IMG/VR virus record: IMGVR_UViG_3300023296_000874 | Location: 62,001-126,000 of that record | Length of the DNA: 64,000 nucleotides | Reading direction: 5' to 3' (one strand) | Shown here: positions 37 to 59,326 of the stretch, one piece after another | How positions within the stretch are numbered: position 1 is the first letter of the stretch | Layout of the letters: every line of letters begins with the position of its first letter | Translations under genes and position numbers: made by a program | Notes under the pieces: model-generated | Seen by the model: only the letters and a program-made list of their open reading frames with translations | Told to the model about the DNA's origin: nothing | Databases searched by the model: none

Positions 37-63
37 AACGACGGATACCCCGAGGAAGTTAGA
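37..63 (-). promoter_or_regulatory. Class A (ECF-like) promoter motif TCTAACT-N16-CGTT with RBS-sequestering hairpin; drives a gene starting at nt 8 that runs out of the window
   Basis: Minus strand reads tctaact-tcctcggggtatccgt-cgtt. A 9-bp inverted repeat (ttcctcggg/cccgaggaa, nt 11-57) covers the GAGGA upstream of the ATG at nt 8. Confidence 0.7.
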
Positions 64-84
64 GAGAACTTGTAGGTTTCGAAC

Positions 85-1005
85 TCAGCGGCGGGTACCA
101 GTACGCACCATCAGGTTGAGGGTCTTCCCGCTCACTTTGAAGGTGGCTGTCTGTCCCCATGCGAACTCCAGCCGGTCAGATTCGATGCCGTCCCCGAAGA
201 TGACTCCACCTTCCTGCATACGCGACGTCACCTTGAGAGGAGCATCCGGCTCCACATACCCTTGCTGGATTGAAACGCCTGAGAAGGGGCTGTCCCAAGC
301 CTCTCTCACCTGAAAGATCAGCACTCCCTCTTCGGGATCTGGGAAGGGCAGAGGGTTCCGGCGCTGTGATGCGACGGAGCTTGCCCAACCCGTACAACCC
401 GTACCGGAGCTGATGATCATACCAGAGGAGCTCTGGTACTCGGTGTGCTGCTCGTAGGCGATGTCGTACTTGGCGCTCTGATGGGAGTGGTGTCCGCAGA
501 ACAGCTCGTTGAGGGCGATGATCTTCCGTCCCTCCTCTTGCGTTTCGTCGTCCTTGATCTCCACCTCCACCATTGAGCGGCGCTGAAGCTTGGCGGTGTT
601 GTTCTTGAGGTAGCCGTAGAGCAAGGGGATCTCCCGCTCACGCCACACCATCATCTTCGCCTTGTAGGAGGTGTCGGGGTTGATCCCGGCGACAGTCTGC
701 CCGTCCAGGTACTTGGCTACGTTCGGGACCAAGCCGTCCTGCCCCACAGCAACGATGATGTCACCGGGCTGAAAGACAAACCTGTCCAGATCGCTCCGGA
801 GGCAGCTCGTCTTTCGCCAGGTGTGTGGTACATCGCGGAGGGCACGGGCAGCAACTTTCAAGGTGACGGCGTGCATCCGTTCCACCTTGTCCATCGACTG
901 CCCCATCAGCTCAAGCCTGAACCTCGCCATCTGAACGGTCCCGTGCTCTACGAGCAGAGATTCGTACTCGGTGGTTCTGCGAACCACTACTACTCGAGGT
1001 TCCAC
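85..1005 (-). CDS. NAD kinase-like protein (SPFH-associated subfamily)
   Basis: GQDG in place of the NADK GGDG motif (VAVGQDGLVPNVAKY), ALNE motif and SSGMIISSGTGCTGW. Lies directly downstream of the SPFH gene, as in bacterial NUDIX-SPFH-NADK-like operons. Confidence 0.8.
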   Translation of the reverse strand: MEPRVVVVRRTTEYESLLVEHGTVQMARFRLELMGQSMDKVERMHAVTLKVAARALRDVPHTWRKTSCLRSDLDRFVFQPGDIIVAVGQDGLVPNVAKYLDGQTVAGINPDTSYKAKMMVWREREIPLLYGYLKNNTAKLQRRSMVEVEIKDDETQEEGRKIIALNELFCGHHSHQSAKYDIAYEQHTEYQSSSGMIISSGTGCTGWASSVASQRRNPLPFPDPEEGVLIFQVREAWDSPFSGVSIQQGYVEPDAPLKVTSRMQEGGVIFGDGIESDRLEFAWGQTATFKVSGKTLNLMVRTGTRR

Positions 1006-1014
1006 GGCTGCCTC

Positions 1015-2133
1015 CTACTTGCTGAGCTGCTGCACAGCTTCCAGCAGTCCGCCACCAATGGTCACGGAGCTGAGGTTGCTGAGGCCTGCGGGGATGCCCT
1101 GGATGGCCAGTGCGAGTGCGGCTTCACCCTTCTCCTCGAAGGCTGCGAGCTGAGCCTCAACCTCGGCCACGCGGGCTTCACCGAGCGCCTCTTCCTGAGC
1201 GACGGTCTGAGCGTCCACGGAGATCCGAATGGCGAGTGCCTGCTCGTCGGAAGCAGCCTTGTTCTCGAGGCGCTGGGCCTCGGCGTTGGCGGCGTCCTCG
1301 AGCTGACGTGCGGAGGTGAGCTCCTGAGCCCTGAGGTTGGCCTCAGTCTTCTTGCGCCCCTGCTCCAACTCGGCGTCCGTGCGGATGCTCACAACAGCAG
1401 CGGAGCTGGCTTCCGAGGCCTCACTGTTCACGCGGTCCTGAGCGATCAGGGCCTCGCGCTGCTTGGCGAGCAGAAGCTTGTTGTTCAGTGCCGCTTCCTC
1501 GATGGCACGCTCCTTCTCAGTAGCGTTGGCACGCCGGTCGAAGGTGGCCTCGTCAGCTTCCTGCTTGAGGCGCTCGTTGGTCTTGGTCTGGAGGGCCTGA
1601 GCAACGTCCCGGTTGGGCTTGATGCTGGTCACGCTTGCGGCGAACACCTCGATGCCGATGTCCAGCGCCTGGAGGGCGGCAAGCACAACGTCGGAGATGG
1701 CCTTGGGGTCATCCACAAGCAGCGGCTCGAGCTCCTGCTGGGAGATGTAGCTCCACGCCGCCTGCTGCGCCGTGTTGGTCAGCACCGTGGCGATGTCCGT
1801 GGAAGGGTCGCCCAGCGGAGTGCCGGTGTCGGTGTCCACAGCGAAGTTGAAGCGGGAGGCGATGTTGAGCGCCGCTTCAACTCCTACGCGCCACTGGCCC
1901 GTCGCGCTGACGGTGACGTCCTGGAAGTCCTTGGTGCGGCAGTTGAAGGTCAGCGGGACGGTCTGGTCCACGACTGGTACCTCAGAGAGGCTCGTGCCCT
2001 TGGTCCAGAACCACAGCCAGAAGCTGAGGCCGGTGCCGCTCTTGGTGACCTTGCCACCTGCAGATGCGATCAGAAAAGTGTGAGCCTCGCCACGCACGTT
2101 GCGTAGAGGCCCGAAGGTTGAGATGGTTGCCAT
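1015..2133 (-). CDS. SPFH/band 7 (flotillin-like) domain protein
   Basis: N-terminal band-7 signature (GLSFW...TKDFQDVTV), ALQT...LKQEADEATFDRRA..EKERAIEE motif, long Ala/Glu coiled coil. Confidence 0.85.
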   Translation of the reverse strand: MATISTFGPLRNVRGEAHTFLIASAGGKVTKSGTGLSFWLWFWTKGTSLSEVPVVDQTVPLTFNCRTKDFQDVTVSATGQWRVGVEAALNIASRFNFAVDTDTGTPLGDPSTDIATVLTNTAQQAAWSYISQQELEPLLVDDPKAISDVVLAALQALDIGIEVFAASVTSIKPNRDVAQALQTKTNERLKQEADEATFDRRANATEKERAIEEAALNNKLLLAKQREALIAQDRVNSEASEASSAAVVSIRTDAELEQGRKKTEANLRAQELTSARQLEDAANAEAQRLENKAASDEQALAIRISVDAQTVAQEEALGEARVAEVEAQLAAFEEKGEAALALAIQGIPAGLSNLSSVTIGGGLLEAVQQLSK

Positions 2134-2230
2134 CTTGTGTCTCCGTGATTGGGCTTGTCGCCCTTGGGTTCATACCCTCCTACTGTTCACGGTTGAAGGC
2201 GGGATAGGTTCCCGCCGACGCACATACTTT

Positions 2231-2449
2231 TCAAACGCCCTTGATGTCCCGTAGTCGCTTGAGCTCAAACGGGCTCGCGTGTTCGGTCCAATGGGTCCAC
2301 GGGTCCACACCCAGTTCCTTGCCGACGTACTCGATGTTCTCGAGCTCCTTGCCCAGATCCGTTTCCCCGACGCCATGTGGGTCGTCGGAGAAGAGGTCGA
2401 GGTAGAGCTCGAACAGCTCGGCAACGAATTCCTGGGTGCGTGGTGTCAC
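2231..2449 (-). CDS. hypothetical protein (72 aa, acidic)
   Basis: Start overlaps the stop of the upstream DUF3228 gene (GTGA); codon style typical of the window. Confidence 0.6.
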   Translation of the reverse strand: MTPRTQEFVAELFELYLDLFSDDPHGVGETDLGKELENIEYVGKELGVDPWTHWTEHASPFELKRLRDIKGV

Positions 2450-3090
2450 TCGGCAGTCTCCCGCGCGGCGAGCATTCCCTTGCCGTTCCAGAAGGTCACG
2501 GCAGCACGCAGGGCAGCTTCAAACTGCACGGCGTCCATGTTGGTGCTCGAGCCGCCGTCGAGGCCGAAGTGGTTCGCCATGAGCGTACCCGGCGTCATCG
2601 GCTGGTCGCCTTCGGTCAGCTTGCCGAGAAGTGTCACCACCTCCCACTCGCTGCCGTTCAGCTCGTCCAGACGCTCCGTGTCCTCTTCGAGAACCGAGCG
2701 GTTGTAGAGCACCACATCCACCCACATCGCCGCAGAAGGGATGCGCGGGCTTCCCAGCTTGTTGATGCGAGCCACCTTGGAGCTCTTGCGGGGCTTCTCA
2801 CCCTCGCGCCGAGCCTTGTACTCCACCACGAAGCGGTCGTCCGGGGTGATGTCCACCACGGGGCAGGTGAAGAAGGTCTCGTCGAACAGCGCGAACACGT
2901 TCAGCGGTACGATGATCACACCGTCCCGGTAGCCCTCACGCTGAGCCGCCCATTCGAGCTGCACTGCCTCCACAAGGATGTCCCACCGCTGGGTGCCCGC
3001 GTCGTCCAAGCACAGGAACTCCGTGAAAGAGGTTCCGGTGCGGTGGTGGTTCTTGCAGAAGCCACTGACGGTGATATCTTGTTTCGGCAT
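2446..3090 (-). CDS. DUF3228-like protein
   Basis: Motifs Y.ARR..E.P, DVVLYNR, WEVV, QPMTPGTLMAN..G..GGS, AV.FW resemble DUF3228. Start moved to ATG 3090 (AAGGA RBS), downstream of the promoter at 3131-3157. Confidence 0.65.
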   Translation of the reverse strand: MPKQDITVSGFCKNHHRTGTSFTEFLCLDDAGTQRWDILVEAVQLEWAAQREGYRDGVIIVPLNVFALFDETFFTCPVVDITPDDRFVVEYKARREGEKPRKSSKVARINKLGSPRIPSAAMWVDVVLYNRSVLEEDTERLDELNGSEWEVVTLLGKLTEGDQPMTPGTLMANHFGLDGGSSTNMDAVQFEAALRAAVTFWNGKGMLAARETAE

Positions 3091-3130
3091 TTGGGTCCGT
3101 TCCTTGGGTCGTTGTCCGTAGTGCTCCCCC

Positions 3131-3157
3131 AACGCATCACGCGGGGGAGCACTCAGA
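3131..3157 (-). promoter_or_regulatory. Class A promoter motif TCTGAGT-N16-CGTT overlapped by a 10-bp GC hairpin
   Basis: Minus strand reads tctgagt-gctcccccgcgtgatg-cgtt; inverted repeat gtgctccccc/gggggagcac at 3121-3152. Confidence 0.65.
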
Positions 3158-3165
3158 GGTTTTCT

Positions 3166-3855
3166 CTACTCGTCGGCCTCGGCTGCAGCGGCAGCAGCTT
3201 CCCGCGCGGTCTTGTTGGCGCGGTCGCAGCCTTCGATCTTGTCGATGAGCCCGTACTCCAGAGCCTCCTCGGCGGTCATCCAGTTGTCGAGCTGCATGTC
3301 GGCTTCGAGCTTCTCGAAGCTCTGGCCGCAGTTCTCGGCCAGCAGCCGGGTCAGCTTCTGGTGGAGGCGGTCTGTGTGCGCCATCGCCGCCTTCATGTCC
3401 TTGTACTTGCCCTGGTTGCCCGAGCTCAGCTCGTGGATCATGATCTCGCTGTTGGGGAGCGCCGAGCGGTTGCCCGCCGAGCCCGCACTGAGCAGGAAGC
3501 TACCCATGGAAGCCGCCATACCCACGACGGTCGTGTGGACGGGGCTGTCGATGAGCTGCATGGTGTCGTAGAGCGCGAGGCCGTCGATCACCGAGCCACC
3601 GGGGCTGTTGATGTACATCATGATGGGCTTGCCGGGAGCGTCCGCCTCGAGGAAGAGGAGCTGCCCAATGGCGATGCGCATCGAAACGCTGTCCACCTGG
3701 GTGCCGACGTAGATGATGCGGTCCCGCATGAGCCGGGAGAACAGGTCGAAACTCCGCTCCATTCGGCCATCGGATTCCACCACGACGGGGATGTTGTAGT
3801 TGGCAGGCAGTCCGCCGAGGGAGGCGAGTACTTCGAGCTGTTCACGAGTGGGCAT
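3166..3855 (-). CDS. clpP: ATP-dependent Clp protease proteolytic subunit
   Basis: IPVVVE..GRMERSFDLFSRLMRDRII, YINSPGGSV, catalytic AASMG (Ser), IMIHE (His), DNWMTAEEALEYGLID. Start set at ATG 3855 after ACGGAG. Confidence 0.95.
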   Translation of the reverse strand: MPTREQLEVLASLGGLPANYNIPVVVESDGRMERSFDLFSRLMRDRIIYVGTQVDSVSMRIAIGQLLFLEADAPGKPIMMYINSPGGSVIDGLALYDTMQLIDSPVHTTVVGMAASMGSFLLSAGSAGNRSALPNSEIMIHELSSGNQGKYKDMKAAMAHTDRLHQKLTRLLAENCGQSFEKLEADMQLDNWMTAEEALEYGLIDKIEGCDRANKTAREAAAAAAEADE

Positions 3856-3909
3856 TTGGTGCTCCGTTGAGGTCATTTTCACAGGACGGTGATCGGGTTT
3901 CAATAGTGC

Positions 3910-3937
3910 AACGAGTTCAACCGGCGTCGAACTCAGA
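3910..3937 (-). promoter_or_regulatory. Class A promoter motif (17-nt spacer) upstream of clpP
   Basis: Minus strand reads tctgagt-N17-cgtt. Confidence 0.55.
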
Positions 3938-3948
3938 GCGTTTCTGGA

Positions 3949-4674
3949 TCAGCCCGTCGCCCGAGCCTTGTCGCCCAACACGCTGTCGGCCGTCACGAAG
4001 GTTGCGCCCGCATCACCGAGGGTGCGGAGGCTGAAGTTCATGCCACCCTCGTCACCGCTCACGGGAGGCACATCGAGCGCCACACAGGCGTCGGTCACCA
4101 CTTCCACGGTGTAGCCACGCTCGAGCAGTCCGGTCACGAAGCCGTCAACGCAGAAGCCGCCGAGGCAGTAGCCAAACACGCGGAAGATCACGTTGTCCTT
4201 GCCGCCCATCTCTTCCACGAGGTGTGCGATGTACGCCTCAGCGATGGGGTTGCTGAAGGCGCTGTACACCTCCTTCTCGAAGTAGAGGCCGACGCCCGCA
4301 AGAGCCTCGGTCGTGAACTCCGTGGAGCCGTACACGCGGGGGCCGTTCCCAGCCTTGTCCTCGCCGATGCAGCCGTCGCCACCCCAGCTCATGGGGAGGA
4401 AGCGGAAGCGGGGAGGCAGCGTGCCGTCGAGCTTCAGCCAGTCCCAGGTGCCCTTGACGGCGTGGGTGGGGAAGATGCCACCGTTGTCGATGAACTCCCA
4501 AGCGTCGTAGCTGTGGCTGTCCACGCAGCCAATGAGGGGCTCGTTGGTGGCAAGGGCGCGAGCCACAAGGCCACGAATGCGGTCGTTGACGGTGTCGTCA
4601 GCGACGGAGAGGTTGCCGTCCTTGTGTGCGAAGGCGTTGGCGGTGTCGACGTCGACGTTGATGTAGCGGGCCAT
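3949..4674 (-). CDS. Nicotinamidase/isochorismatase-family cysteine hydrolase (PncA-like)
   Basis: Catalytic Asp (INVD), Lys (FEKEVYSAF) and Cys (GFCV); metal ligands DSH and FPTHAVKGT; G.L.V and VVTDAC motifs. Confidence 0.8.
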   Translation of the reverse strand: MARYINVDVDTANAFAHKDGNLSVADDTVNDRIRGLVARALATNEPLIGCVDSHSYDAWEFIDNGGIFPTHAVKGTWDWLKLDGTLPPRFRFLPMSWGGDGCIGEDKAGNGPRVYGSTEFTTEALAGVGLYFEKEVYSAFSNPIAEAYIAHLVEEMGGKDNVIFRVFGYCLGGFCVDGFVTGLLERGYTVEVVTDACVALDVPPVSGDEGGMNFSLRTLGDAGATFVTADSVLGDKARATG

Positions 4675-4676
4675 GA

Positions 4677-5336
4677 TCAGGTCTCCTTGGAGAAGCGGTA
4701 GGTTGTTCGTCGGCCTTTGCTCTGCTCAGTCACCGGTTCGATGACGCCCAGCGCAGTAGCCTTCTTTCTCAAGTTCGAGCTGTCTTCCGCCTTGCCCGTG
4801 ATGTGTCCCATCAGGTCGCGGTAGTCGCTCATGTTGAAGTTCATGTAGAGGAAGCCCGCAACCACGTCCGGGTCGTAGCGGTGCTTCTTGAGGAATTCCT
4901 GAGCGAACTCAAGGATGCCCCGATGGTCGAATGCAAGGTCCATGTTCAGCGCAGCGGCGAGTGGCGTCCACCCGTCGTGTCCCCTGAATACGTGGGAGAT
5001 CGGGCAGATGTGCGCCACGCTGAGCACCTTGTCGCGGGTGTCCCGGTCGAAGCCGTCAAAGACGTGCATCTGTACCGGTTGAACCTGCGCGTGTGCCTCG
5101 GGCACGTAGCGTCGTAGGGAGCGGCGTACCGCATCAAAGAGGAGTTCGTTGGGCTTCACAAACGCGCCGGGGAGCGCCAACTGGCCCATCGCCGGAGGGT
5201 TGCGCCGCCTGATGAGCTTCACGCGGAGCTCAGGGTCTACCACTACAACGTCCACCGCCAGAGGCGGGTTCTTGTACTGCGAACGGTCGTAGTCCGCAAA
5301 GTACTCTTCGTCGGTGATGTGGGTTTCGTCGGGCAC
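4677..5336 (-). CDS. NrtR-like regulator (Nudix + winged helix) with degenerate Nudix box
   Basis: Y..P.LAVDVVV, LIRR..PP..GQLALPGAFV, RD.R, LAFDH..I, C-terminal wHTH (SNLRKK...GRRTTYRF). The Nudix box reads E.LFDAVRRSLRRY and lacks the REUXEE glutamates. Confidence 0.8.
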   Translation of the reverse strand: MPDETHITDEEYFADYDRSQYKNPPLAVDVVVVDPELRVKLIRRRNPPAMGQLALPGAFVKPNELLFDAVRRSLRRYVPEAHAQVQPVQMHVFDGFDRDTRDKVLSVAHICPISHVFRGHDGWTPLAAALNMDLAFDHRGILEFAQEFLKKHRYDPDVVAGFLYMNFNMSDYRDLMGHITGKAEDSSNLRKKATALGVIEPVTEQSKGRRTTYRFSKET

Positions 5337-5356
5337 GCTGGTTATTCCTACTTGTT

Positions 5357-5413
5357 ACTTGGTACGTTTTACCTTGTTGTCAGTATAACGCCAGCGATGT
5401 GCAGAAAGTTAGA
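5357..5413 (-). promoter_or_regulatory. Class A promoter (5387-5413) with two GT-N7-AC cores, candidate NrtR operators
   Basis: tctaact-ttctgcacatcgctgg-cgtt. GT-N7-AC cores at 5362-5372 and 5379-5389 in an AT-rich intergenic stretch; the flanking palindromy is only partial. Confidence 0.55.
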
Positions 5414-5426
5414 CTTTCATTTCGAA

Positions 5427-5762
5427 CTATTCGCCATCCAATTCGCTCTTGAGGTAGGAGATGGTGCGGTCGATGTCCGGGTCGGCCAGGTAGAACCGAG
5501 CCGTGTGGTAGGGAGTGGCGTCATGGTGGCGATACATCACCACGAACCAGCCTTGTGCCTCGAAATACGTCCGGAAGCCCTCATGGTCAGGGGGCCGCAG
5601 CGACACGTCTCGGTCGCTGTACCCTCGCTCTCGGAGTCGGGCCACCCAACTGGGGTAGCGAGAGAATCCCTGGATAGTGCTCTGCGCGGCTTGGTGAGCC
5701 TCTACGGTCAGTCCCACGATCTCCGGAATGAACGGGATCGGTACCTCACAGGTGTCAAGCAT
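5427..5762 (-). CDS. hypothetical protein
   Basis: ATG 5762 preceded by GGGGAG; the longer ORF-track version overlaps the neighbouring gene. Confidence 0.55.
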   Translation of the reverse strand: MLDTCEVPIPFIPEIVGLTVEAHQAAQSTIQGFSRYPSWVARLRERGYSDRDVSLRPPDHEGFRTYFEAQGWFVVMYRHHDATPYHTARFYLADPDIDRTISYLKSELDGE

Positions 5763-5805
5763 GTACTCCCCTTCTAAGCACTCAACGTGGTCAGGTACGG
5801 AATAC

Positions 5806-6120
5806 TCAGAGGTATTTCGGGTCCTGCCACCAGTCCTGGCTTTCCAAATCAAGCATCTCGTAGAGGCGGTCTGGAAGTTCCGACAGCCCTTCCTCCCTGA
5901 ACCACTCCCCACGCCACCGAATGCGGTAGCTGCGAAGTCGCCCATGGATGTAGAACTCGGTGGGTCCCTCTTTGGGGACGAGCAGGATGACCTTCAGCGT
6001 GTAGGGGTTCCCGGTCTGAAGCTCGTTGAGGCGGCGCTCAATGTCCTTGGTGCGTCCGATCTTCACCACCCCGGTCACCGCCGCTTGGATGATGTACAGG
6101 TCCTCCCCAAACGATTTCAC
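5806..6120 (-). CDS. T5orf172 / GIY-YIG superfamily nuclease
   Basis: LYIIQ....VKIGRT.DIERRL.ELQTGNP..L, E..IH..L, RGEWF. Confidence 0.85.
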   Translation of the reverse strand: MKSFGEDLYIIQAAVTGVVKIGRTKDIERRLNELQTGNPYTLKVILLVPKEGPTEFYIHGRLRSYRIRWRGEWFREEGLSELPDRLYEMLDLESQDWWQDPKYL

Positions 6121-7073
6121 AGGAAGAACGGGCTCTCCTCTACTACCGGCTGAGCAGGCAGGAGGAAAGAGACGTAGCGGGGTGAGGGGTCGAACGGATT
6201 GAACTTGCGCTTGTAGGTCGCGTTGAAGCCATGCTTGCCACCTTCACCGATGGCTACTCCATCAGCTACGTGGGTCACACCCTGTCGCGCCATGTCGGCA
6301 AAGCAGTCGTGTTGAGCCCATGCACTCAGGTTCGGTATGCCTCTGTCACATGCCATGCCTGTCGTGTGGCCCCAGCACGTTTCTGTCATGGGTTGGTTGA
6401 GGTGGATCACGAGCGGCTCTCCGTCAATGCGGTAGAGCCGGTTGATGCCGTCCTCGTAGTGCCGGTCGAGAATGTACTCGTATTTCCGGTAGTTGATGTT
6501 CATGCCGCCGCGCTCCTTGGACTCCTTGACCCAACGCTTCATCACCGCGCGGGCCTCCTCCAGGTTTCCGGAGTCGATGGGCTCAGCCGTGTAGCCGGTG
6601 GTGGTCCGCTTGAAGGCGTTGATGTCAGCTCGGAGGCGACGCCACTTCTTTCCAGAGAGTGTGTCGATCCCTGCAATGTCGTAGGTGTACTCGCCGTACT
6701 CACTGAATTTCCCAGGAGTGAGCTTGACGCCCTCTGCCATGAAGGCCGCAGCGATATCAGCGGCCCAGGAGGCTGGGACGTTCTCAATCTTGAGGTTCTT
6801 GTCCGTGCTTCCCTTGTACGCCTGCCACCACGCAACCAACTCGGGAATGACTGCGTCCTTGTCACCGTAGGCTCGGTAGACACGGTAGTATTTCCCGTAC
6901 TTCACACTGAAGAGGAGAAGCGTGTCCTCGCTGACGACCTTGTTGCCCTTGAACACTCCGTGGTTGATGAACCCGTAAGTGTAGGGGAGGCAGTCGGTCA
7001 TTGTAGCTACACCGTCCATACGTGAACGGATGAAGGGGATGTCTGCCGTGGTCAGCGGGGTAGTTTCACTCAT
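6117..7073 (-). CDS. DUF2156 / LPG-synthase C-terminal-like double-GNAT protein (putative aa-tRNA-dependent transferase), copy 2
   Basis: EYTYD....LSGKKWRRLRADINAFKR, W....K, GVTHVADG...G...K.KF.P match the DUF2156 pattern; paralogous to 7791-8759. Confidence 0.65.
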   Translation of the reverse strand: MSETTPLTTADIPFIRSRMDGVATMTDCLPYTYGFINHGVFKGNKVVSEDTLLLFSVKYGKYYRVYRAYGDKDAVIPELVAWWQAYKGSTDKNLKIENVPASWAADIAAAFMAEGVKLTPGKFSEYGEYTYDIAGIDTLSGKKWRRLRADINAFKRTTTGYTAEPIDSGNLEEARAVMKRWVKESKERGGMNINYRKYEYILDRHYEDGINRLYRIDGEPLVIHLNQPMTETCWGHTTGMACDRGIPNLSAWAQHDCFADMARQGVTHVADGVAIGEGGKHGFNATYKRKFNPFDPSPRYVSFLLPAQPVVEESPFFL

Positions 7074-7809
7074 CGAAGAGGCTCATGTATTCGTGGTCAT
7101 CACCACCCAAGATGTCCGGGTGGATCAGGCGCTCGGGAACGTCGGGAGCTTCTGCGCCGCCTGAGGTCTCCCGGTGAAGGTAGAAGGGCCGGTTGTACTT
7201 GAGAACCGTCGTAGGGAGGAAGTCCCTCGGGCCTGTGTAGTAGAAACCGTCCACGCCGGTAGATGCAGCGATGGCTGCTTCCATGCGCGGGTCAAGAGTG
7301 GCAACCGGAATGCCCTGGCTCTTGAACTTGAGCGTGATGACTGCGTAGCCCTTCTCGGCCTTGGCGTTCAAGAGGTCGAACAGCATCCCAACGTCTTCGG
7401 GTCCGGTGGTGGTGAACAGCACGCCGCAAGAGAGGACGAAGTCCCACGTCGGGGCCTTGTTCAGCTCTTCCCAGTAGTTCCCGATGCGGAAGTCGTACTC
7501 CGGCACTCGGGTTCGGGCGTCCAGCACGTTGGCAGGGACGATGTCGAACCCTTGGTACTTCAGCTCGGGCCTCTGGTCGCGTAGCATCTCAGCCAGCGTG
7601 CCCGTGCCGCACCCACACTCGAGAATGGAGGTGGCGTTGGCTGGGATCAGGTCGATGAGGCCCTGCCAATGAGCAACCATGTCCTCGGGAGAGTACTTGT
7701 ACCACTTGAAGCGGGTGGTGTCGTCAGGGTCCTCGTACTTCCCGGCTGACCGAGTGTAGGAGTCCCGCCAACGGAGGATCGTTTCATCTGCTACTGGAAT
7801 GGAAGACAT
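7066..7809 (-). CDS. Class I SAM-dependent methyltransferase
   Basis: SILECGCGTG motif I, YQGFDI motif II, WDFVLSCGVL. Confidence 0.85.
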   Translation of the reverse strand: MSSIPVADETILRWRDSYTRSAGKYEDPDDTTRFKWYKYSPEDMVAHWQGLIDLIPANATSILECGCGTGTLAEMLRDQRPELKYQGFDIVPANVLDARTRVPEYDFRIGNYWEELNKAPTWDFVLSCGVLFTTTGPEDVGMLFDLLNAKAEKGYAVITLKFKSQGIPVATLDPRMEAAIAASTGVDGFYYTGPRDFLPTTVLKYNRPFYLHRETSGGAEAPDVPERLIHPDILGGDDHEYMSLFDE

Positions 7810-9603: not shown

Positions 9604-9664
9604 GTACTGTCCTCCGAGTGGTGCTCAGAGTCCAGTAACGGTCGAAAACGGTCCAAGTAGGCAA

Positions 9665-9994
9665 TCAGACCCGCTTCGTCACCTTGACTACTGCTTGGTA
9701 GAGGTCCGGCAGGCTCTCTTTGCCGCCCTTGGACTCTACGTTGTCCCAGTGAATGAGTGCCACAACCTGCGCGGTGTGGTCTCCATCAGCCATCCGCCTG
9801 GCAAGCTGTCCACCATCTCGAGCAGCGCCCTTCCGATCCGCGTCGGGAGAGGTGTACTCGTACTTGCCGGAGTCGGTCAAGCCTCGTGGTCGTCGGTCAG
9901 CGGCCCGGAGGATGTCCTTCCAGTTCGGATGGGGGAGGTCAGCCAGCAGTTCAGCGTGCTTCAAGGTGTCAATTCGGATGACGTGGTCTTGCAT
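9665..9994 (-). CDS. hypothetical protein
   Basis: Translationally coupled to rmlA (TGATG overlap). Confidence 0.6.
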   Translation of the reverse strand: MQDHVIRIDTLKHAELLADLPHPNWKDILRAADRRPRGLTDSGKYEYTSPDADRKGAARDGGQLARRMADGDHTAQVVALIHWDNVESKGGKESLPDLYQAVVKVTKRV

Positions 9995-10719: not shown

Positions 10720-10745
10720 GTGTATCTCCTTCTGGAGAGCCAGAC

Positions 10746-10773
10746 CTACAAATGGATCATGATCCTTTTGTAG
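10746..10773. promoter_or_regulatory. Back-to-back pair of class B (putative late) promoter motifs
   Basis: Near-palindrome ctacaaatggaTCATGAtccttttgtag gives TCATGATCCATTTGTAG on minus (toward rmlA) and TCATGATCCTTTTGTAG on plus (toward 10810). Confidence 0.7.
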
Positions 10774-10809
10774 ACGCCGGATGCAAGACCAGTCGTCTCC
10801 GGAGGCATC

Positions 10810-12685: not shown

Positions 12686-12686
12686 C

Positions 12687-13499: not shown

Positions 13500-13502
13500 C
13501 CA

Positions 13503-14487: not shown

Positions 14488-14492
14488 GGTGT

Positions 14493-14533
14493 CTCCGTAC
14501 CCACTCAACGAGAGCAGGTACGGAGGACTCAGA
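14493..14533 (-). promoter_or_regulatory. Class A promoter TCTGAGT-N16-CGTT (14507-14533) with RBS-sequestering hairpin
   Basis: tctgagt-cctccgtacctgctct-cgtt; inverted repeat ctccgtacc/ggtacggag (14493-14525) pairs with the GGAG RBS. Confidence 0.7.
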
Positions 14534-14535
14534 GA

Positions 14536-15241: not shown

Positions 15242-15268
15242 AACGAGGCGAGAGCGGCAGCACTCAGA
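15242..15268 (-). promoter_or_regulatory. Class A promoter TCTGAGT-N16-CGTT
   Basis: tctgagt-gctgccgctctcgcct-cgtt. Confidence 0.7.
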
Positions 15269-21497: not shown

Positions 21498-21524
21498 AAC
21501 GCTCGTAAACGCGGAGAAGTTAGA
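21498..21524 (-). promoter_or_regulatory. Class A promoter TCTAACT-N16-CGTT
   Basis: tctaact-tctccgcgtttacgag-cgtt. Confidence 0.7.
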
Positions 21525-21805: not shown

Positions 21806-21832
21806 AACGCGCTCACCTCGTGGAGAGTTAGA
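21806..21832 (-). promoter_or_regulatory. Class A promoter TCTAACT-N16-CGTT
   Basis: tctaact-ctccacgaggtgagcg-cgtt. Confidence 0.7.
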
Positions 21833-27042: not shown

Positions 27043-27843
27043 TTAGGAGTCCTTACGCTCCACCGGGAGTGTACTCCTGATGCCCCATGTGTTCTTCGCC
27101 CAGAAGGTCTCGAGTGCGAAGTAGCCGCCGAGCATGGTGATCTGGTACGTGAGAACGGGCACCCAAGGCACCGAGCCGAGTAGGGCGGTAAACACTCCCA
27201 GCATCACCACCGCGCTTGTTGTCCGGTACGTCAGGGCCTTGGCGGCGCTGCGCTTGGTCTCTACCTGATCGTCCTCGGTGATGCCGAAGTTGCTGTCGTG
27301 CCACAGGCGCTCATGCACCAGGCTGAAGAAGGTCATCATCACCGAGTAGCCGGTGAGCAGCCACAGGCTCAGTCCGAGCTTCCAAAGCACAAGGGAAAAT
27401 ACTCCGAGTGCGAGGGTGCGGTAGAGCAGCATCTTGGCTGCCGTCCGGTAGCCGGTGCTCATGGCGCTGCGGTCCGGTTCCCAAGGCACACGTCCACGGC
27501 ACCGGTCGTAGGTGCGGAAGCCGAAGATGGCGATGGGGTACACGATGGGCTCACCGTGTAGGAGCAGCACGATGGGGATGAGCTCGGGGAGGCCGACGTT
27601 CCAGAGGATGATGGGGATCACCACGTCCTCGAACAGTTCCCACACCACGGCGAAGACGAAGAAGCGGGGGCCTTGGCTCTTGAGCAGCTTCTTGAGCTCG
27701 CGCCAAGTTTCGAAGATGTTGACCTTCTCCCAGATCTCTCCGGCAGCCCAGCACCATGCACGTCGTAGATGTTTCAGCACTTCTGAACCTCCGTGTTGTA
27801 CTGGAAACGCATCCAGTGTCCGGAAACTCAGAGGTGTGGTCAA
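27043..27843 (-). CDS. membrane protein with two DUF2061-like repeats
   Basis: RTAAKMLLYR...VHERLW and RSAAKALTYR...ALETFW repeats; several TM helices. Confidence 0.6.
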   Translation of the reverse strand: MTTPLSFRTLDAFPVQHGGSEVLKHLRRAWCWAAGEIWEKVNIFETWRELKKLLKSQGPRFFVFAVVWELFEDVVIPIILWNVGLPELIPIVLLLHGEPIVYPIAIFGFRTYDRCRGRVPWEPDRSAMSTGYRTAAKMLLYRTLALGVFSLVLWKLGLSLWLLTGYSVMMTFFSLVHERLWHDSNFGITEDDQVETKRSAAKALTYRTTSAVVMLGVFTALLGSVPWVPVLTYQITMLGGYFALETFWAKNTWGIRSTLPVERKDS

Positions 27844-33703: not shown

Positions 33704-33753
33704 ATGGTACTCCGTGTTGTATATCCAACGGAGTACCATTGAGAAAACTCAGA
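33703..33753 (-). promoter_or_regulatory. Class A promoter TCTGAGT-N16-CGTT (33727-33753) with 13-bp RBS-sequestering hairpin
   Basis: tctgagt-tttctcaatggtactc-cgtt; perfect inverted repeat aatggtactccgt/acggagtaccatt. Confidence 0.7.
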
Positions 33754-50309: not shown

Positions 50310-52886
50310 TCAGAGGAGGCCGAGGCCGATCTGGTACTTCCGGGGGCTAACGATGGGGTTGCCCTTCAGTCGGTACAGAGCGACACAGCTATCTCCGCCA
50401 CCAGCCAGGTCAAAGGCTACGGCGTTTTGTTCGTCATTTGATGTACGGGTGAAAACCATGAGGAGCAAAGTTCCTCGCTTTCCAACCAGTGTGTCTTCTA
50501 CGCAAACAGCGATGCATGGGTAGAGCACACGATGTGGCTTGTCGCCTTGAAGGGATTTGGCGTGGACGCTGGGCTGGTAGATAACCGGGCTTCCAAGCAC
50601 CACATCGTCGTAGGCGCTGCCTCTCAACTCGCTGTAGTAGCTCCGTCCCTCGCCGTCTGTACCCACACTCGTGAAGGCCAGGAAGGGTACGTGCGCCAAG
50701 GGCACATTCACGGGCAACCTGATGAGGCCCCCGTCCGTACCAAAGTCATCCACGCTCAACGCCTGATCGAAGTTCAGGAGGTGGTCTCCGGCATTCATGG
50801 AGGCGTTTGAGGAAGGGAACTGGGAGGCTGGCGAAACGTAGGGGTAGCCCGCGTTGTGTCCACCCGATCCAGCGGTAGTGGTGTAGAGCCAATCAGGAGC
50901 GTAGAGCATGTGGAGGTTCACGTCGGCTACGTTCAAGCCGCCCGCGCCCACGTTGAGGCTCTGCTGTGCGGGGCTCTGGTAGTACAGGGAGCACTGCGAA
51001 ACTGCGGGGAGCGGCTCCTTGCTGATGTAGTCCACGATCATCGCACGGTGAGCAGCGGGTACTGCGGTGTGGAGGATGATGTTGTCCTCCGTGCCGATGC
51101 CCAGATACAGGTTGGTGCTCTTGCCGGGGTCTGCCACGCCGTCGTAGATGCCGGTCACCGTTCGGATCTGGTGAGGCAGGTGTGTCTCTCCTGTAGTCCG
51201 AGAGGTGATGGCGAGGTCCGTGTAGGTGAACTGCACCACCAGGCACGCGGTCCGGCTGGGCTTGTAGAACAGGCTGTCGGGATCCATGGTAGTCGATACC
51301 ATGCCGCCTGGAACCACGTTCTCGTACACCAAGCCATCACCCGCAGTCAGCGTAGTGATGTCACCCGAAGTGCCGATGCCTTCCTGGTAGAGGTGCGGTG
51401 TGCGGCTGAGGCCCGCGTCACCGGGGAACATGACGCCCACCTTCACGAATAGCGTGCCGCCTGTGCGGCTACCTACCGGGATGTTGGTGTCAAAGTCCGG
51501 GGAGAGTACGACGGTCAGGGTCTTGGTGTTCAAACCCGTCACGGAGAAGTCAACGGAGGAGTACCCACTGAGGGTCCCCATCACTTCAATGCGCTCAAAC
51601 AGCCCGTCAGATGCCACCGGGAGGCCGATGTCGAACGTGTCTCCGGCTCCCCAGATGCCGCCCGTGATGGCTACGGTTCGGTCACCGAGTGTGATCTCTT
51701 GGAACACCTCGTTGCCGGTCACCGCGTCGCTGAAGTGCTTGCGGAAGGCGTCTGCCTCCCCAATGAGCGTAGCGCCAGGAGTGTCAACGGGTCCAACCTC
51801 GTCGATTGCCCGGATGTACGTGCCGCGCCCACCACCGCCGAGGTTGTGGTCCTCGAAGTCGGTCTTGAGCTTGTTGTCGAGCAGCCAGGCGAAGTTCCTC
51901 TTGAGCATGGCTTCCATGTCCCAATCAGCGCTCACCGTCTTGCGGAGGTCCAGGATGTCCTGCTCAACGACGTCATCGTGAGCAAAGCCGGTGGGTGAGG
52001 TGCCCGAGCCACCGTTCTGGTTGGTGTCCTGAGCCCAGGTGGTCTGGTTCCGACGTGCCACGGCGCAGAGCGGGATCGCGTAGATGTTCCCGTCTACCGT
52101 GTGGGTGGTCGTGTTGTGTCCGCTGGATACCCAAAGGCCGGGGTCACCATCGACGTTGCTGCTGGTAAATGCGATGGCTGACGGGGAGGAGTCAGGGCCT
52201 TGTGCCAGTACGTTGCCGGTGTCGTCCAGCCCGTCGGGGTAGGAGTACATGTCCACGTCTTCAACGATGCGGATGCGCCACTGGATCTGCACACGCCTGG
52301 ATGTCTCCGCACCTACACCGCCGTCCAACACGTCATCGACGAAGTTGTCAGCGGTAGGGGAGTCTACCCAACCGTTGTAGAAGATCTTGCCGTTGGCGTC
52401 ACGGTGTCCGTTGGTGGTGTCCGTGGCAGCGGTGCCCGTCAGGGGCGCACGCCATACCTCAATGAACACGAGGTCCCAGCGCTTCGCACCAACGCCTGTC
52501 GGGGCCGCTGGTAGCGTGATGGTGAGCCACTCTTCGTTCTTCTCCTGCAGGTTCACGAGCATGTCAGCTACGTGAGCTACCTGTCCGGGTCCGAAGTAGA
52601 AGGTATTGGCAGTGGTGCCGCCGCCGAAGGTCTTTTCGTTCCTGAAGTTGCCTGGCTCATCGATGTAGCCAGTGCCGACAGGGAACACGTCGGGGCTGAA
52701 GTAGTCCCGGCTGAACAGAAATCCCGAGCAGATCTGCCCGGATCGGTAGAGGTGCTTGAGGAAAAGTTCGCCCGCGAGGTTGAACTCTTTGTCCAGCGGT
52801 GGTCTGCCCGTGCGCCAGGTTACCTGTTCGAGCGACTTGTTGTCGGGCTCGAGGTATCCGCTCACGGGACCGAAGTCCTTGCTCAT
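50310..52886 (-). CDS. baseplate/tail structural protein (858 aa), paralog of 40030-44862
   Basis: GRPPLDKEFN, VFIEVW, GAETSRRVQIQWRIR, DPGLW, VDGNIYAIPLCAVARRN. Confidence 0.75.
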   Translation of the reverse strand: MSKDFGPVSGYLEPDNKSLEQVTWRTGRPPLDKEFNLAGELFLKHLYRSGQICSGFLFSRDYFSPDVFPVGTGYIDEPGNFRNEKTFGGGTTANTFYFGPGQVAHVADMLVNLQEKNEEWLTITLPAAPTGVGAKRWDLVFIEVWRAPLTGTAATDTTNGHRDANGKIFYNGWVDSPTADNFVDDVLDGGVGAETSRRVQIQWRIRIVEDVDMYSYPDGLDDTGNVLAQGPDSSPSAIAFTSSNVDGDPGLWVSSGHNTTTHTVDGNIYAIPLCAVARRNQTTWAQDTNQNGGSGTSPTGFAHDDVVEQDILDLRKTVSADWDMEAMLKRNFAWLLDNKLKTDFEDHNLGGGGRGTYIRAIDEVGPVDTPGATLIGEADAFRKHFSDAVTGNEVFQEITLGDRTVAITGGIWGAGDTFDIGLPVASDGLFERIEVMGTLSGYSSVDFSVTGLNTKTLTVVLSPDFDTNIPVGSRTGGTLFVKVGVMFPGDAGLSRTPHLYQEGIGTSGDITTLTAGDGLVYENVVPGGMVSTTMDPDSLFYKPSRTACLVVQFTYTDLAITSRTTGETHLPHQIRTVTGIYDGVADPGKSTNLYLGIGTEDNIILHTAVPAAHRAMIVDYISKEPLPAVSQCSLYYQSPAQQSLNVGAGGLNVADVNLHMLYAPDWLYTTTAGSGGHNAGYPYVSPASQFPSSNASMNAGDHLLNFDQALSVDDFGTDGGLIRLPVNVPLAHVPFLAFTSVGTDGEGRSYYSELRGSAYDDVVLGSPVIYQPSVHAKSLQGDKPHRVLYPCIAVCVEDTLVGKRGTLLLMVFTRTSNDEQNAVAFDLAGGGDSCVALYRLKGNPIVSPRKYQIGLGLL

Positions 52887-54996: not shown

Positions 54997-55013
54997 CTAC
55001 AAACGGATTATGA
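54997..55013 (-). promoter_or_regulatory. Class B (putative late) promoter motif
   Basis: TCATAATCCGTTTGTAG at the head of the tail operon. Confidence 0.75.
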
Positions 55014-57587: not shown

Positions 57588-57604
57588 CTACAAATGCAGT
57601 ATGA
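57588..57604 (-). promoter_or_regulatory. Class B promoter motif variant
   Basis: TCATACTGCATTTGTAG, 39 nt upstream of the baseplate gene. Confidence 0.6.
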
Positions 57605-57616
57605 CAGCATTTCCAT

Positions 57617-57643
57617 TCTGACTTCCAGCACCACATCACCGTT
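57617..57643 (+). promoter_or_regulatory. Class A promoter TCTGACT-N16-CGTT
   Basis: tctgact-tccagcaccacatcac-cgtt. Confidence 0.7.
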
Positions 57644-57668: not shown

Positions 57669-58100
57669 ATGCCCAAAACCCTCGCCGTCTATGCAGGCGC
57701 ATTCCTGACCTCCCGTGGCAAGACCGCGCTGCGCCTTTGGTGGCAAGCCAACGTCAGTCCGCTGGAGAGTAAGAGCTTCGGCCATCACATGACCATCAAG
57801 TTCAAGCCCTCAGATGAGGAGCTGTACGAGTTGATGGAGCGCCTCGGTGGCGTAGGTGAGACCGTTCAGTTGCGCATCGTGGGCTACGCCGAGGACGCGG
57901 ACCTGGGAGTGCAGGCGGTGGTTGTGGAAGGCGTCTACTCCACCAACGACAACCCCCACGTCACTGTCGCCACGGACGGAGCCAAGCCTTTCCTGAGCAA
58001 CAAGCTCCTCAAGCGGGGCTATACCGACGTGCGCGGAGCCGCCCTCGAAGCTCGGCTCGGATACTTCGACGGACGCGCCGACCGCTTCGAGCTGCCTTAG
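57669..58100 (+). CDS. 2H phosphoesterase (cyclic phosphodiesterase fold)
   Basis: Two HxT motifs (HHMTI, PHVTV) and P..SN.LL; GGAGG RBS before ATG 57669. Confidence 0.75.
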   Translation: MPKTLAVYAGAFLTSRGKTALRLWWQANVSPLESKSFGHHMTIKFKPSDEELYELMERLGGVGETVQLRIVGYAEDADLGVQAVVVEGVYSTNDNPHVTVATDGAKPFLSNKLLKRGYTDVRGAALEARLGYFDGRADRFELP

Positions 58101-58205
58101 TATTCCACACTATCAACGGCTTTCCGTTGTAGAATGGAGTACTGGCATTCTGTCATCACACGAGAAGAGACTATTCCCACTCCCTGCGAAAAAGACGACC
58201 CCTTC

Positions 58206-58232
58206 CCTGAGAATACGGGCACATGGTCCGTT
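58206..58232 (+). promoter_or_regulatory. degenerate class A promoter CCTGAGA-N16-CGTT
   Basis: Same spacing as the consensus, two mismatches. Confidence 0.45.
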
Positions 58233-58270
58233 GAGTCTCTGAACCCCTTTCGGAGACCCAATACCCAACC

Positions 58271-59275
58271 ATGATACTCCTTGTAATCGCTGTAACCGCA
58301 GTTGTACTTGCCTCGGCGCTCTGCTCCGGCTCTGAAGCCGCCTTGATGGCAATGCCCAACGTGCGTGTTCGCCAGCTCGCGGAGGAAGGTGGCTCAACAG
58401 CCGCCATACTGCTCCGGTTGAAAGACAACCTCGACAGGCCCATTGCTGCCATCGTGGTTCTCAACAACATCGCCAACATCGTCGGCTCCATCGTGGTTGG
58501 TGGGATTGCTACTGACGTGCTCGGAAGTGCCTACCTCGGTGCCTTCTCAGCCGTGTTGACCTTCGCCATCATCCTCTTCGCAGAGATCATCCCCAAGAGC
58601 ATCGGCACCAACTACCCGGAGCGCATCAGCCTCCTGATTGCACGACCGCTCAGTGCGATCTCGTGGTTGCTGACCCCGGCACTCTGGATGCTCGAACAGG
58701 TGACCAAGCTCATTGGCGGACCCAACGGTGCTACGGCAGCGGACGAGGCTACCTTGCGCTTCATGGTGCGGGAAGCCGGACGTGAGGACCAGATTGAGGA
58801 GGATGAGCGCGACATGATCCTCCGGGTGTTCAGCCTCAACGACCTGACCGCCAGCGACATCATGACTCCCCGTACCGCGATGACCTACCTCCGCGCTGAC
58901 CTGACTGCCAAGGAGCAGGAGGCCCAGATCAAGGCGTCACAGCACTCCCGCATCATCGTTGTGGGTGAGACGCTCGACGACGTGGTGGGCGTGGTGATGC
59001 TGAGGGACTTGCTCCTCTCGCTCATGAATGGCGGACTGCTACCGAAGCCTGTGCCTGCCGCCTTTGTCAGCCCCGACATGCCCGCCGATGAGCTCATGCG
59101 GCACTTCCTACCCGCGCGGAACCACATGGCTCTCGTGCGGGGAGAGTACGGCGCGGTACATGGCTTGGTGACCCTCGAGGACGTCCTTGAGATCGTTGTT
59201 GGCGAAGAGATTGTTGACGAGACTGACCGTGACGACGACATGCAGGCTGTTGCACGGGACCGCGCTACATCCTGA
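58271..59275 (+). CDS. CNNM/CorB-family (DUF21 + CBS) Mg2+/metal transport protein
   Basis: SALCSGSEAAL, LNNIANI, IILFAEIIPKS, DIMTPR, HSRI.V, EYG...GLVTLEDVLE.VVG.EIVDETD. Confidence 0.92.
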   Translation: MILLVIAVTAVVLASALCSGSEAALMAMPNVRVRQLAEEGGSTAAILLRLKDNLDRPIAAIVVLNNIANIVGSIVVGGIATDVLGSAYLGAFSAVLTFAIILFAEIIPKSIGTNYPERISLLIARPLSAISWLLTPALWMLEQVTKLIGGPNGATAADEATLRFMVREAGREDQIEEDERDMILRVFSLNDLTASDIMTPRTAMTYLRADLTAKEQEAQIKASQHSRIIVVGETLDDVVGVVMLRDLLLSLMNGGLLPKPVPAAFVSPDMPADELMRHFLPARNHMALVRGEYGAVHGLVTLEDVLEIVVGEEIVDETDRDDDMQAVARDRATS

Positions 59276-59281
59276 ATAGCC

Positions 59282-59326
59282 TCTGAGTGATCAGGCGCTC
59301 CGTCCGTTACCTGTGCAGCACGGAGC
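59282..59326 (+). promoter_or_regulatory. Class A promoter TCTGAGT-N16-CGTT (59282-59308) with RBS-sequestering hairpin
   Basis: tctgagt-gatcaggcgctccgtc-cgtt; gctccgt/acggagc pairs with the GGAG RBS. Confidence 0.7.

What the first reader, a model, noticed from the sequence alone, without database searches (positions are those of the whole stretch)
37..59308. Eleven-copy bipartite promoter TCT(G/A)A(G/C)T-N16-CGTT defining an ECF-like regulon of non-structural genes
The motif occurs at 37-63, 3131-3157, 3910-3937 (N17), 5387-5413, 14507-14533, 15242-15268, 21498-21524, 21806-21832 and 33727-33753 on minus, and 57617-57643 and 59282-59308 on plus, with a degenerate copy at 58206-58232. It always lies at a gene boundary, is always oriented with the downstream gene, and has an almost invariant 16-nt spacer. 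A CGTT -10 element with a rigid spacer is characteristic of ECF sigma promoters. Inference: a phage-encoded or co-opted host ECF-type sigma drives early/middle host-takeover genes.
Basis: partly seen in the sequence, partly recalled or inferred. Interest (0 to 1): 0.7.

Follow-up and report, generated by a model that had tools for sequence, protein, structure and literature searches.

The report
Phage promoter class with own sigma
A repeated two-part DNA signal in front of the non-structural genes of an uncultured 257-kb salt-lake phage is a real promoter class of the ECF type. The phage itself encodes a very divergent ECF-like sigma factor that most likely reads it, so this is a new example of a known phage strategy.

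Summary
TCT[GA]A[GC]T-N16-CGTT occurs 12 times in the window against 0.06 expected. There is also one N17 copy and one degenerate copy. The whole record (257,533 bp, an IMG/VR virus from salt-lake metagenomes) holds 34 copies against about 1.2 expected. Of these, 32 are intergenic and all 34 point at the next gene, usually 19-50 nt before an SD-led start codon. The genes behind them are non-structural: replication, nucleotide metabolism, ClpP, IF3, aminoacyl-tRNA synthetases. Structural blocks carry a second motif, tCATAATCCnTTTGTAg (26 copies). No sigma-70-type promoters, intrinsic terminators or phage RNA polymerase were found. About 22 kb left of the window lies a 583-aa gene whose N-terminal 200 residues form a divergent ECF sigma (hhalign 96%; Foldseek top hits are ECF sigmas). 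It is fused to four C-terminal repeats and is preceded by its own copy of the motif. Related phages that carry this sigma also have the motif at matching intergenic positions. No transcription-start data exist, so the sigma-promoter link is inferred. Verdict: a real promoter class and a new variant of the known phage sigma/promoter pair.

The parts
37..63 (-). Class A promoter-like site, TCTAACT-N16-CGTT. The next gene starts 28 nt downstream and runs out of the window's left end (523 aa, weak NAPRTase-like hit).
3131..3157 (-). Class A site, TCTGAGT-N16-CGTT, before gene 2446-3090 (214 aa, DUF3228). The spacer and the downstream leader form a 12-bp inverted repeat.
3910..3937 (-). Class A site with a 17-nt spacer, before the ClpP gene 3166-3855.
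5387..5413 (-). Class A site, TCTAACT type, before gene 4677-5336 (219 aa, NUDIX).
5784..5810 (-). In natural strain variants a cluster of changes around it leaves both conserved blocks intact.
14507..14533 (-). Class A site before gene 14296-14487 (63 aa).
15242..15268 (-). Class A site with the second-best PWM score in the genome. It is followed by about 310 nt without a credible ORF (14930-15236) that fold stably.
21498..21524 (-). Class A site (TCTAACT ... CGTTAGAG) before gene 21086-21427 (113 aa) and the AAA+/RFC-like gene 19331-20917.
21806..21832 (-). Class A site (TCTAACT ... CGTTAGAG) before gene 21537-21743 (68 aa). The same position carries a class-A-like site in the relative L018 (13621).
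27806..27832 (-).
33727..33753 (-). Class A site before an ORF that most likely starts at TTG 33703 (164 aa), followed by the SNF2 helicase gene 31422-33155. A 15-bp inverted repeat spans the spacer and the SD/start.
57617..57643 (+). Class A site at a divergent junction, back to back with a class B motif at 57589-57603 (-). It precedes gene 57669-58100 (143 aa).
58206..58232 (+). Degenerate class A copy, cCTGAGa-N16-CGTT, 38 nt before ATG 58271 (334 aa, CNNM/CBS).
59282..59308 (+). Class A site before gene 59332-59553 (73 aa).

Best explanation
The motif is the -35 element (TCT[G/A]A[C/G]T) and -10 element (CGTT) of one promoter class of an uncultured, tailed, roughly 260-300-kb phage of a salt-lake bacterium. 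The phage has no RNA polymerase of its own in the 257 kb held, so host core polymerase must do the work. The most likely specificity subunit is a phage-encoded, very divergent ECF-type sigma factor. This is a 583-aa protein encoded at G000:C1:37901-39652 (minus strand), about 22 kb left of the window. Its N-terminal 200 residues form sigma2 and sigma4 domains, and its C-terminal 380 residues are four tandem repeats of about 90 aa. Holoenzyme with this sigma would start transcription about 7-9 nt after CGTT, giving short leaders of about 15 nt with a GGAG Shine-Dalgarno sequence. That would express the non-structural genes: replication, nucleotide metabolism, protease, translation-related and other auxiliary genes. 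The sigma gene has its own copy of the motif and sits behind another copy that heads its operon, so it would amplify itself as cellular ECF sigmas do. Structural genes use a different, single-block motif. Shown here: the motif, its placement, the fold and family of the sigma candidate, and their co-occurrence in relatives. Inferred: that the motif is transcribed from, that this sigma reads it, and the timing.
For: The motif is enriched 200-fold in the window and about 28-fold in the genome, with a rigid spacer. Of 34 copies, 32 are intergenic and all 34 are co-oriented with the next gene. CGTT usually lies 19-50 nt before the start codon. Extra conservation (R at +7 and A at +9 and +12 after CGTT, then the SD) fits a start site. 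At three divergent junctions a class A and a class B motif stand back to back, exactly where promoters must be. No sigma-70-consensus promoters or intrinsic terminators exceed chance. No Rfam family matches. No T7-like or multisubunit RNA polymerase was found. Evidence for the sigma candidate: it is the best hit of Pfam Sigma70_r2 in six frames and the best hit of two home-made sigma HMMs. Its family alignment against 10 bacterial ECF sigmas gives hhalign probability 96.2% and E 2.7e-9 over 150 columns that span sigma2 to sigma4. The PolA-family control gives 0.05%. For the AF2 model, nearly all of the top 25 or so Foldseek PDB hits are ECF sigmas, including SigH, SigL, sigmaE, CnrH, AlgU and BldN. 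JGI names one homologue a sigma24 family protein. A class A copy (N17) lies 36 nt before its start codon. Relatives that carry the sigma homologue (39-61% GC, groundwater and other sources) have 10 class-A-like sites against 2.7 expected. Nine are on the coding strand, and those checked lie in intergenic gaps. Several sit at matching positions: before the DUF1848-small ORF-sigma operon, before the Metallophos gene, and before the 68/69-aa gene. The geometry, 7-mer-N16-CGTx, equals that of ECF41 promoters, and autoregulation and fused C-terminal domains are known ECF traits (PMC3426412).
Against: There are no transcription-start data: no RNA run was listed. The sigma domains do not reach any Pfam or NCBIfam threshold, and the AF2 model is only moderate (pLDDT 70, pTM 0.41). 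Only 9 of 34 sites have the 'AAC' typical of ECF -35 elements. If every promoter in the sigma region needs the sigma, its first expression is unexplained. The record is estimated 81% complete, so another sigma or a polymerase may lie in the missing part. Enrichment in relatives is modest and rests on short loci. The second motif (class B) is also conserved in relatives, so assigning the sigma to class A rather than class B rests on promoter architecture and on a small presence/absence pattern.
Confidence: 0.6

Rival explanations
1. The motif is a promoter class, but a host ECF or other alternative sigma reads it and the phage co-opts that sigma. The phage's own sigma-like protein would then serve another promoter class, for example class B, or another role.
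For: The architecture is ECF-like. No host-type sigma-70 promoters are seen that could express a phage sigma first. A host sigma would solve that bootstrapping problem. Class B is also conserved in relatives, so the phage sigma could belong to it.
Against: The motif recurs at matching positions in relatives from different habitats with 39-61% GC. These are unlikely to share one host ECF sigma. It was not seen in the two relatives for which no sigma homologue was returned. Class B is a single 16-nt block without a -35/-10 pair, which is unlike ECF promoters. The sigma gene carries class A, not class B, upstream.
Confidence: 0.2
2. The motif is read by host primary-sigma holoenzyme remodelled by a phage activator that binds the heptamer, as in T4 MotA/AsiA-type sigma appropriation.
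For: It is bipartite with a fixed distance, like T4 middle promoters. The phage has a T4-like replication set with an RFC-like AAA+ protein.
Against: The downstream element is CGTT, not a TAnnnT -10. A two-domain ECF-like sigma is present and self-associated with the motif. MotA and AsiA families were not searched for, so this rests on architecture alone.
Confidence: 0.07
3. The motif acts in RNA, not DNA. It would be an intercistronic processing, stability or translational-control element of polycistronic transcripts.
For: Many sites sit in inverted repeats whose 3' arm covers the SD or start codon. Cognate pairing is stronger than non-cognate pairing (-17.2 against -13.7 kcal/mol, permutation P < 1e-4).
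Against: Stable folding of the 80 nt before start codons is a general property of intergenic regions in this genome and is not specific to class A (z -1.27 against -1.0, P 0.19). Stem positions vary while the two blocks and their spacing are fixed. The spacer sequence is not conserved. The motif occurs at divergent junctions where no upstream transcript exists. No Rfam family matches.
Confidence: 0.04

Closest known systems
ECF (group 4) sigma factors and their promoters, for example ECF41 (TGTCACA-n16-CGTC) and E. coli sigmaE
   Same: The promoter is bipartite with a 7-mer, a rigid 16-nt spacer and a CGT-containing -10. The sigma has only sigma2 and sigma4 domains. The sigma gene is preceded by its own promoter. 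A C-terminal extension is fused to the sigma, as in ECF41 (PMC3426412).
   Different: The sigma is encoded by a phage. It is too divergent for the Pfam and NCBIfam models tried. Most -35 elements read GAG or GAC instead of AAC. The extension is four tandem repeats of about 90 aa of unknown fold, not the ECF41-type domain. No anti-sigma was identified. The regulon has at least 34 promoters covering about half of a 257-kb phage genome.
Phage-encoded sigma factors that redirect host polymerase (phiEco32 gp36 and phage 7-11; B. subtilis SPO1 gp28 and gp33/34; T4 gp55)
   Same: A phage without its own polymerase uses its own sigma to switch host polymerase to a phage-specific promoter class (PMC12276001, PMC8948821; SPO1 and T4 from my own knowledge). 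Jumbo phages that lack a polymerase commonly encode sigma factors (PMC7824862).
   Different: The sequence family differs. Here the promoters are fully bipartite and ECF-like, and the sigma carries a long repeat extension. None of the function has been tested.
T4-type late promoters (a single -10-like block read by gp55 with a sliding clamp)
   Same: Applies only to the second motif, class B. It is a single conserved block without a -35, in front of structural genes, in a phage with an RFC-like clamp-loader gene.
   Different: This is a resemblance only. No gp55 or gp33 homologue was sought or found, and class B is not the finding under review.

Membership tests
ECF-type (group 4 sigma) promoter | Bipartite -35/-10 with a nearly fixed spacer of about 16-17 nt | tested here: met
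   31 copies have N16, 3 have N17 and none has N15.
ECF-type (group 4 sigma) promoter | 'CGT' in the -10 element | tested here: met
   CGTT is invariant by construction of the search. It is also kept in PWM-found weak copies and in relatives.
ECF-type (group 4 sigma) promoter | 'AAC' in the -35 element | tested here: not met
   Only the TCTAACT subclass (9 of 34) has AAC. The others read GAC or GAG. Relatives mostly have TCTAAC.
ECF-type (group 4 sigma) promoter | Transcription starts a few nt downstream of the -10 | not testable with these tools
   No RNA run was listed for this phage. There is only indirect conservation of R/A 7-12 nt after CGTT.
ECF-type (group 4 sigma) promoter | The sigma gene is preceded by its own promoter (autoregulation) | tested here: met
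   An N17 copy lies 36 nt before the sigma-like gene and another copy heads its operon. The operon-head position is conserved in L213 and L220.
Sigma-70 family, group 4 (ECF) sigma factor, for the 583-aa protein | Sequence match to the curated family models (Pfam Sigma70_r2, r4, r4_2, Sigma70_ECF; TIGR02937) | tested here: not met
   The best hit is 9.5 bits for r2. The others gave nothing.
Sigma-70 family, group 4 (ECF) sigma factor, for the 583-aa protein | Sigma2 and sigma4 domains in order, detectable by profile-profile and fold comparison | tested here: met
   hhalign gives 96.2% and E 2.7e-9 across the whole ECF profile, against 0.05% for the control. Foldseek PDB top hits are ECF sigmas at probability 0.9-1.0, though E is only 3e-3 to 0.1 and the model has pLDDT 70.
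Sigma-70 family, group 4 (ECF) sigma factor, for the 583-aa protein | Binds core RNA polymerase and confers promoter specificity | not testable with these tools
   The complex-prediction job with promoter DNA was not folded.
Primary sigma-70 promoter (TTGACA-N17-TATAAT) | Match to both hexamers | tested here: not met
   Consensus matches are at or below chance in two 20-kb stretches. Class A has CGTT at the -10.
Known structured RNA families (Rfam 15) | Covariance-model match at the gathering score | tested here: not met
   No match in the 64-kb window.

The most novel reading that the evidence does not exclude
The phage may run a closed sigma circuit. No host-type promoter is visible anywhere in the 257 kb, and the sigma gene sits behind its own promoter class. 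The first sigma molecules might therefore arrive with the virion, or be made through cross-recognition by a host ECF sigma. The four winged-helix-like C-terminal repeats could be the built-in module that tethers, times or delivers the sigma. An injected, self-amplifying ECF sigma would be a takeover mechanism not described so far.
Probability: 0.12. Interest if true: 0.75.

Novelty: new variant of a known kind. Interest (0 to 1): 0.5.

Why it matters
The result gives a sequence-only map of the transcription programme of an uncultured huge phage. That map holds about 34-40 promoters for non-structural genes, 26 of another class for structural genes, and a candidate sigma factor that standard family models miss. 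The sigma-promoter pair is directly testable in a heterologous host. It would add a new orthogonal ECF-like sigma/promoter pair and a new sigma architecture with four fused repeats. It also shows that a clade of large phages from groundwater, salt lakes and other waters shares this system.

Tried and rejected
- **Transcription starts.** I looked for RNA-seq runs holding the phage. None was listed, so starts could not be mapped.
- **Population variation.** Natural strain variants gave only anecdotal support. One cluster of changes spares both conserved blocks at 5784-5810. A second stretch was almost invariant.
- **Host identity.** ClpP matched Clostridia at only 50-55% and was uninformative. 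The phage has no tRNA genes.
- **Close relatives.** There are none in cultured phages or IMG/VR. PolA identity is at most 36%, and the sigma has no IMG/VR relative.
- **Other sigma hunts.** Batch Pfam scans of about 190 non-structural proteins, PHROGs on 20 candidates and paralogue clustering found no further sigma.
- **Phage RNA polymerase.** It is rejected for the part of the genome held.
- **Hairpin-gated translation.** I considered that the promoter-spanning hairpins gate translation specifically at class A. The control showed similar fold stability before genes without the motif, so I demoted this to a side note.
- **Sigma-DNA complex.** The complex-prediction job for sigma with DNA was not folded. 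It counts neither for nor against binding.
- **C-terminal repeats.** PDB sequence searches with the sigma N-terminal domain gave only noise. The Atlas search on the C-terminal repeats gave only weak winged-helix leads.
Full report
**What the window is.** The window is bases 62,001-126,000 of a single 257,533-bp IMG/VR virus record. The record has 59.5% G+C, is classed as linear, and CheckV estimates it 81% complete. Near-identical sequence is held by DNA runs labelled salt lake metagenome. Gene content shows a tailed phage of a bacterium. It has a sheath-like protein, baseplate J and a beta-helix fibre, together with PolA, a topoisomerase, an SNF2 helicase, DnaB and an RFC-like AAA+ protein. 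It also carries many auxiliary genes: ClpP, IF3, L7/L12-like proteins, two aminoacyl-tRNA synthetases, peptide deformylase, Cpn10 and an OmpA-domain protein. No cultured phage is close.

**Check of the observation.** The pattern TCT[GA]A[GC]T-N16-CGTT has 12 exact matches in the window against 0.06 expected.
- The N17 copy at 3910-3937 is real, and so is the degenerate copy at 58206-58232.
- Genome-wide there are 34 copies: 31 with N16, 3 with N17 and none with N15. Markov-1 simulations give a mean of 1.2.

I called genes with a simple codon-usage caller trained on the long ORFs of this genome. It gave 320 genes and 91.5% coding. Against these calls, 32 of 34 copies lie in intergenic gaps (P about 2e-32), and the two exceptions overlap doubtful calls. 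In all 34 cases the next gene downstream is on the motif's strand. CGTT usually lies 19-50 nt before the start codon, with GGAG in between. The motif often begins 2-3 nt after the stop codon of the preceding gene.

An alignment of the sites shows extra conservation. There is a C just before the heptamer, T/C-rich bases after it, a purine right after CGTT, and R, A, A at +7, +9 and +12. A PWM finds about six weaker intergenic copies.

**Context.** The genes behind the motif form four blocks, in genome coordinates:
- the minus-strand block from 11 to 96 kb;
- the plus-strand block at 119-122 kb;
- the plus-strand block at 170-197 kb;
- the plus-strand block at 238-241 kb.

All are non-structural.

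K-mer enrichment in upstream regions revealed a second motif, tCATAATCCnTTTGTAg. It has 26 intergenic, co-oriented copies and is a single block with no -35 partner. It lies mainly before the structural blocks. At three divergent junctions a class A copy and a class B copy stand back to back.

Several other signals are absent:
- Sigma-70-consensus promoters and intrinsic terminators do not exceed chance.
- There is no Rfam match in the window.
- There are no tRNA genes.
- I found no T7-like or multisubunit RNA polymerase: the Pfam six-frame searches were negative, the DxDGD motif is absent, and the large unknown proteins gave no polymerase hit.

The phage therefore seems to rely on host core polymerase, and classes A and B are its two visible promoter classes.

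**Who reads the motif.** Curated sigma models found nothing significant in six frames. The best weak Pfam Sigma70_r2 hit (9.5 bits) fell in a 583-aa ORF at G000:C1:37901-39652 on the minus strand. Two HMMs that I built from 30 bacterial sigma genes and ran without filters on all six-frame ORFs ranked the same ORF first.

The N-terminal 200 residues of this protein show the usual ECF landmarks by eye. Six homologues at 48-62% identity exist in metagenomes, and JGI names one of them a sigma24 family protein.
- **Profile comparison.** The family alignment (A8) was compared with an alignment of 10 bacterial ECF sigmas (A9). hhalign gives probability 96.2% and E 2.7e-9 over 150 columns, from sigma2.1 to the end of sigma4.2. 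The PolA family against the same ECF alignment gives 0.05%.
- **Fold comparison.** An AF2 model (pLDDT 70) has two helical domains joined by a disordered linker. Its Foldseek matches in the PDB are almost exclusively ECF sigmas: M. tuberculosis SigH and SigL, E. coli sigmaE, CnrH, AlgU and BldN. Probabilities are 0.9-1.0, but E-values are only modest.
- **C-terminal half.** The remaining 380 residues are four tandem repeats of about 90 aa, with only weak winged-helix leads.

The gene has an N17 class A copy 36 nt upstream. Its operon (a DUF1848-like gene, a small ORF, then the sigma) is headed by another copy at 40960-40986.

**Relatives.** PolA homologues at 54-64% identity lie on large contigs from groundwater, marine and other metagenomes, with syntenic replication modules. 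The sigma homologues lie on some of the same phages.

In loci of sigma-bearing relatives (39-61% G+C), class-A-like sites occur 10 times against 2.7 expected. I allowed at most one mismatch in the heptamer, with N16 and CGTT. Nine of the ten are on the coding strand, and those checked lie in intergenic gaps. Three positions match ours:
- ahead of the DUF1848-small ORF-sigma operon (L213 8837, L220 3539);
- ahead of the Metallophos gene (L216 17670);
- ahead of the 68/69-aa gene beside the AAA+ gene (L018 13621).

Two relatives for which no sigma homologue was returned (L015, L017) show no credible class A site in 22 kb each, although L017 has class-B-like sites. This pattern is small, but it links class A rather than class B to the sigma. 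It also argues against a host sigma, because hosts of such different composition and habitat are unlikely to share one ECF specificity.

**Mechanism and its limits.** The geometry, a 7-mer, 16 nt and CGTx, is that of ECF promoters such as ECF41. Autoregulation and fused C-terminal regulatory domains are known ECF traits (PMC3426412). Phage-encoded sigmas that redirect host polymerase are well known, also in jumbo phages without a polymerase (PMC7824862, PMC12276001, PMC8948821).

My best explanation is therefore a phage ECF-like sigma that reads about 34-40 promoters of the non-structural genes. Four things are not shown:
- any transcription start (no RNA run was listed);
- binding of the sigma to core polymerase or to DNA (the complex job was not folded);
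- the timing of expression;
- how the sigma is first made, given that no host-type promoter is visible.

The AAC signature of ECF -35 elements is present in only 9 of 34 sites. About 19% of the genome is missing.

**Hairpins.** Many sites lie in inverted repeats that pair the spacer, and sometimes the heptamer, with the leader and SD. Cognate pairings are stronger than shuffled pairings. However, the 80 nt before start codons fold about as stably at genes without the motif. I therefore treat the hairpins as a general intergenic feature of this compact genome and not as part of the promoter. One sub-pattern is specific. Five of the seven N16 TCTAACT sites tabulated are followed by CGTTAGAG, which makes CTCTAAC/GTTAGAG a palindrome. 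None of the other sites has this. Its meaning is open.

**Verdict.** The system is a new variant of a known kind: a phage sigma with its cognate promoter class. It is of moderate interest, chiefly because the sigma escapes standard models, has an unusual four-repeat extension, and is directly testable.

Noticed in passing
window 10747-10761 (-), 10758-10772 (+), 15668-15682 (-), 38472-38486 (-), 54998-55012 (-), 57589-57603 (-); 26 copies genome-wide: A second promoter-like motif, tCATAATCCnTTTGTAg. It is a single block with no -35 partner. All copies are intergenic and co-oriented, mostly before structural gene blocks. Similar copies occur in the closest relatives (L017, L018). It may be the late promoter class, and its reader is unknown.
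   Followed up: partly
window 14930-15236 (-): About 310 nt without a credible ORF lie directly behind a very strong class A site, the second-best PWM score in the genome. They begin with a GC hairpin plus a T-run, contain a tRNA T-arm-like GGTTCGAACCC, and fold stably (-137.8 kcal/mol, z -3.1). There is no Rfam or ARAGORN match. This may be a phage non-coding RNA.
   Followed up: partly
G000:C1:37901-39652 (-), = L004:7904-9652; residues 205-583 of P0047: The sigma-like protein carries four tandem repeats of about 90 aa (motif NPYRRG..W..L..G...RRPADQ). Homologues have two to four repeats, and one has a repeat at the N-terminus. Only weak winged-helix leads were found.
   Followed up: partly
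window 21498-21524 and 21806-21832, and genome 27922, 37003, 170522: In the TCTAACT subclass the bases after the -10 read CGTTAGAG, so the -35 and the -10 region form a perfect 7-bp palindrome. This is absent from the TCTGA[CG]T sites and is not kept in relatives.
   Followed up: partly
window 21-100: In one salt-lake run (X4) a strain about 97-98% identical has this stretch, which includes the promoter at 37-63, replaced by 331 other letters.
   Followed up: no
whole record; window 3166-3855 for ClpP: The phage carries a large set of translation and proteostasis genes: IF3, two L7/L12-like proteins, a class II (D/K/N) synthetase and a Glu/Gln-tRNA synthetase, peptide deformylase, Cpn10 and ClpP. 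It has no tRNA genes.
   Followed up: partly
window 40030-44862 (-) and 50310-52886 (-): The 1610-aa and 858-aa proteins of the tail/fibre block share a 446-residue region at 30% identity (blastp E 6e-35). Neither has a Pfam match.
   Followed up: no
window 1-20000 and L002 1-20000: Sigma-70-consensus promoters and canonical intrinsic terminators are at or below chance level in this genome.
   Followed up: partly
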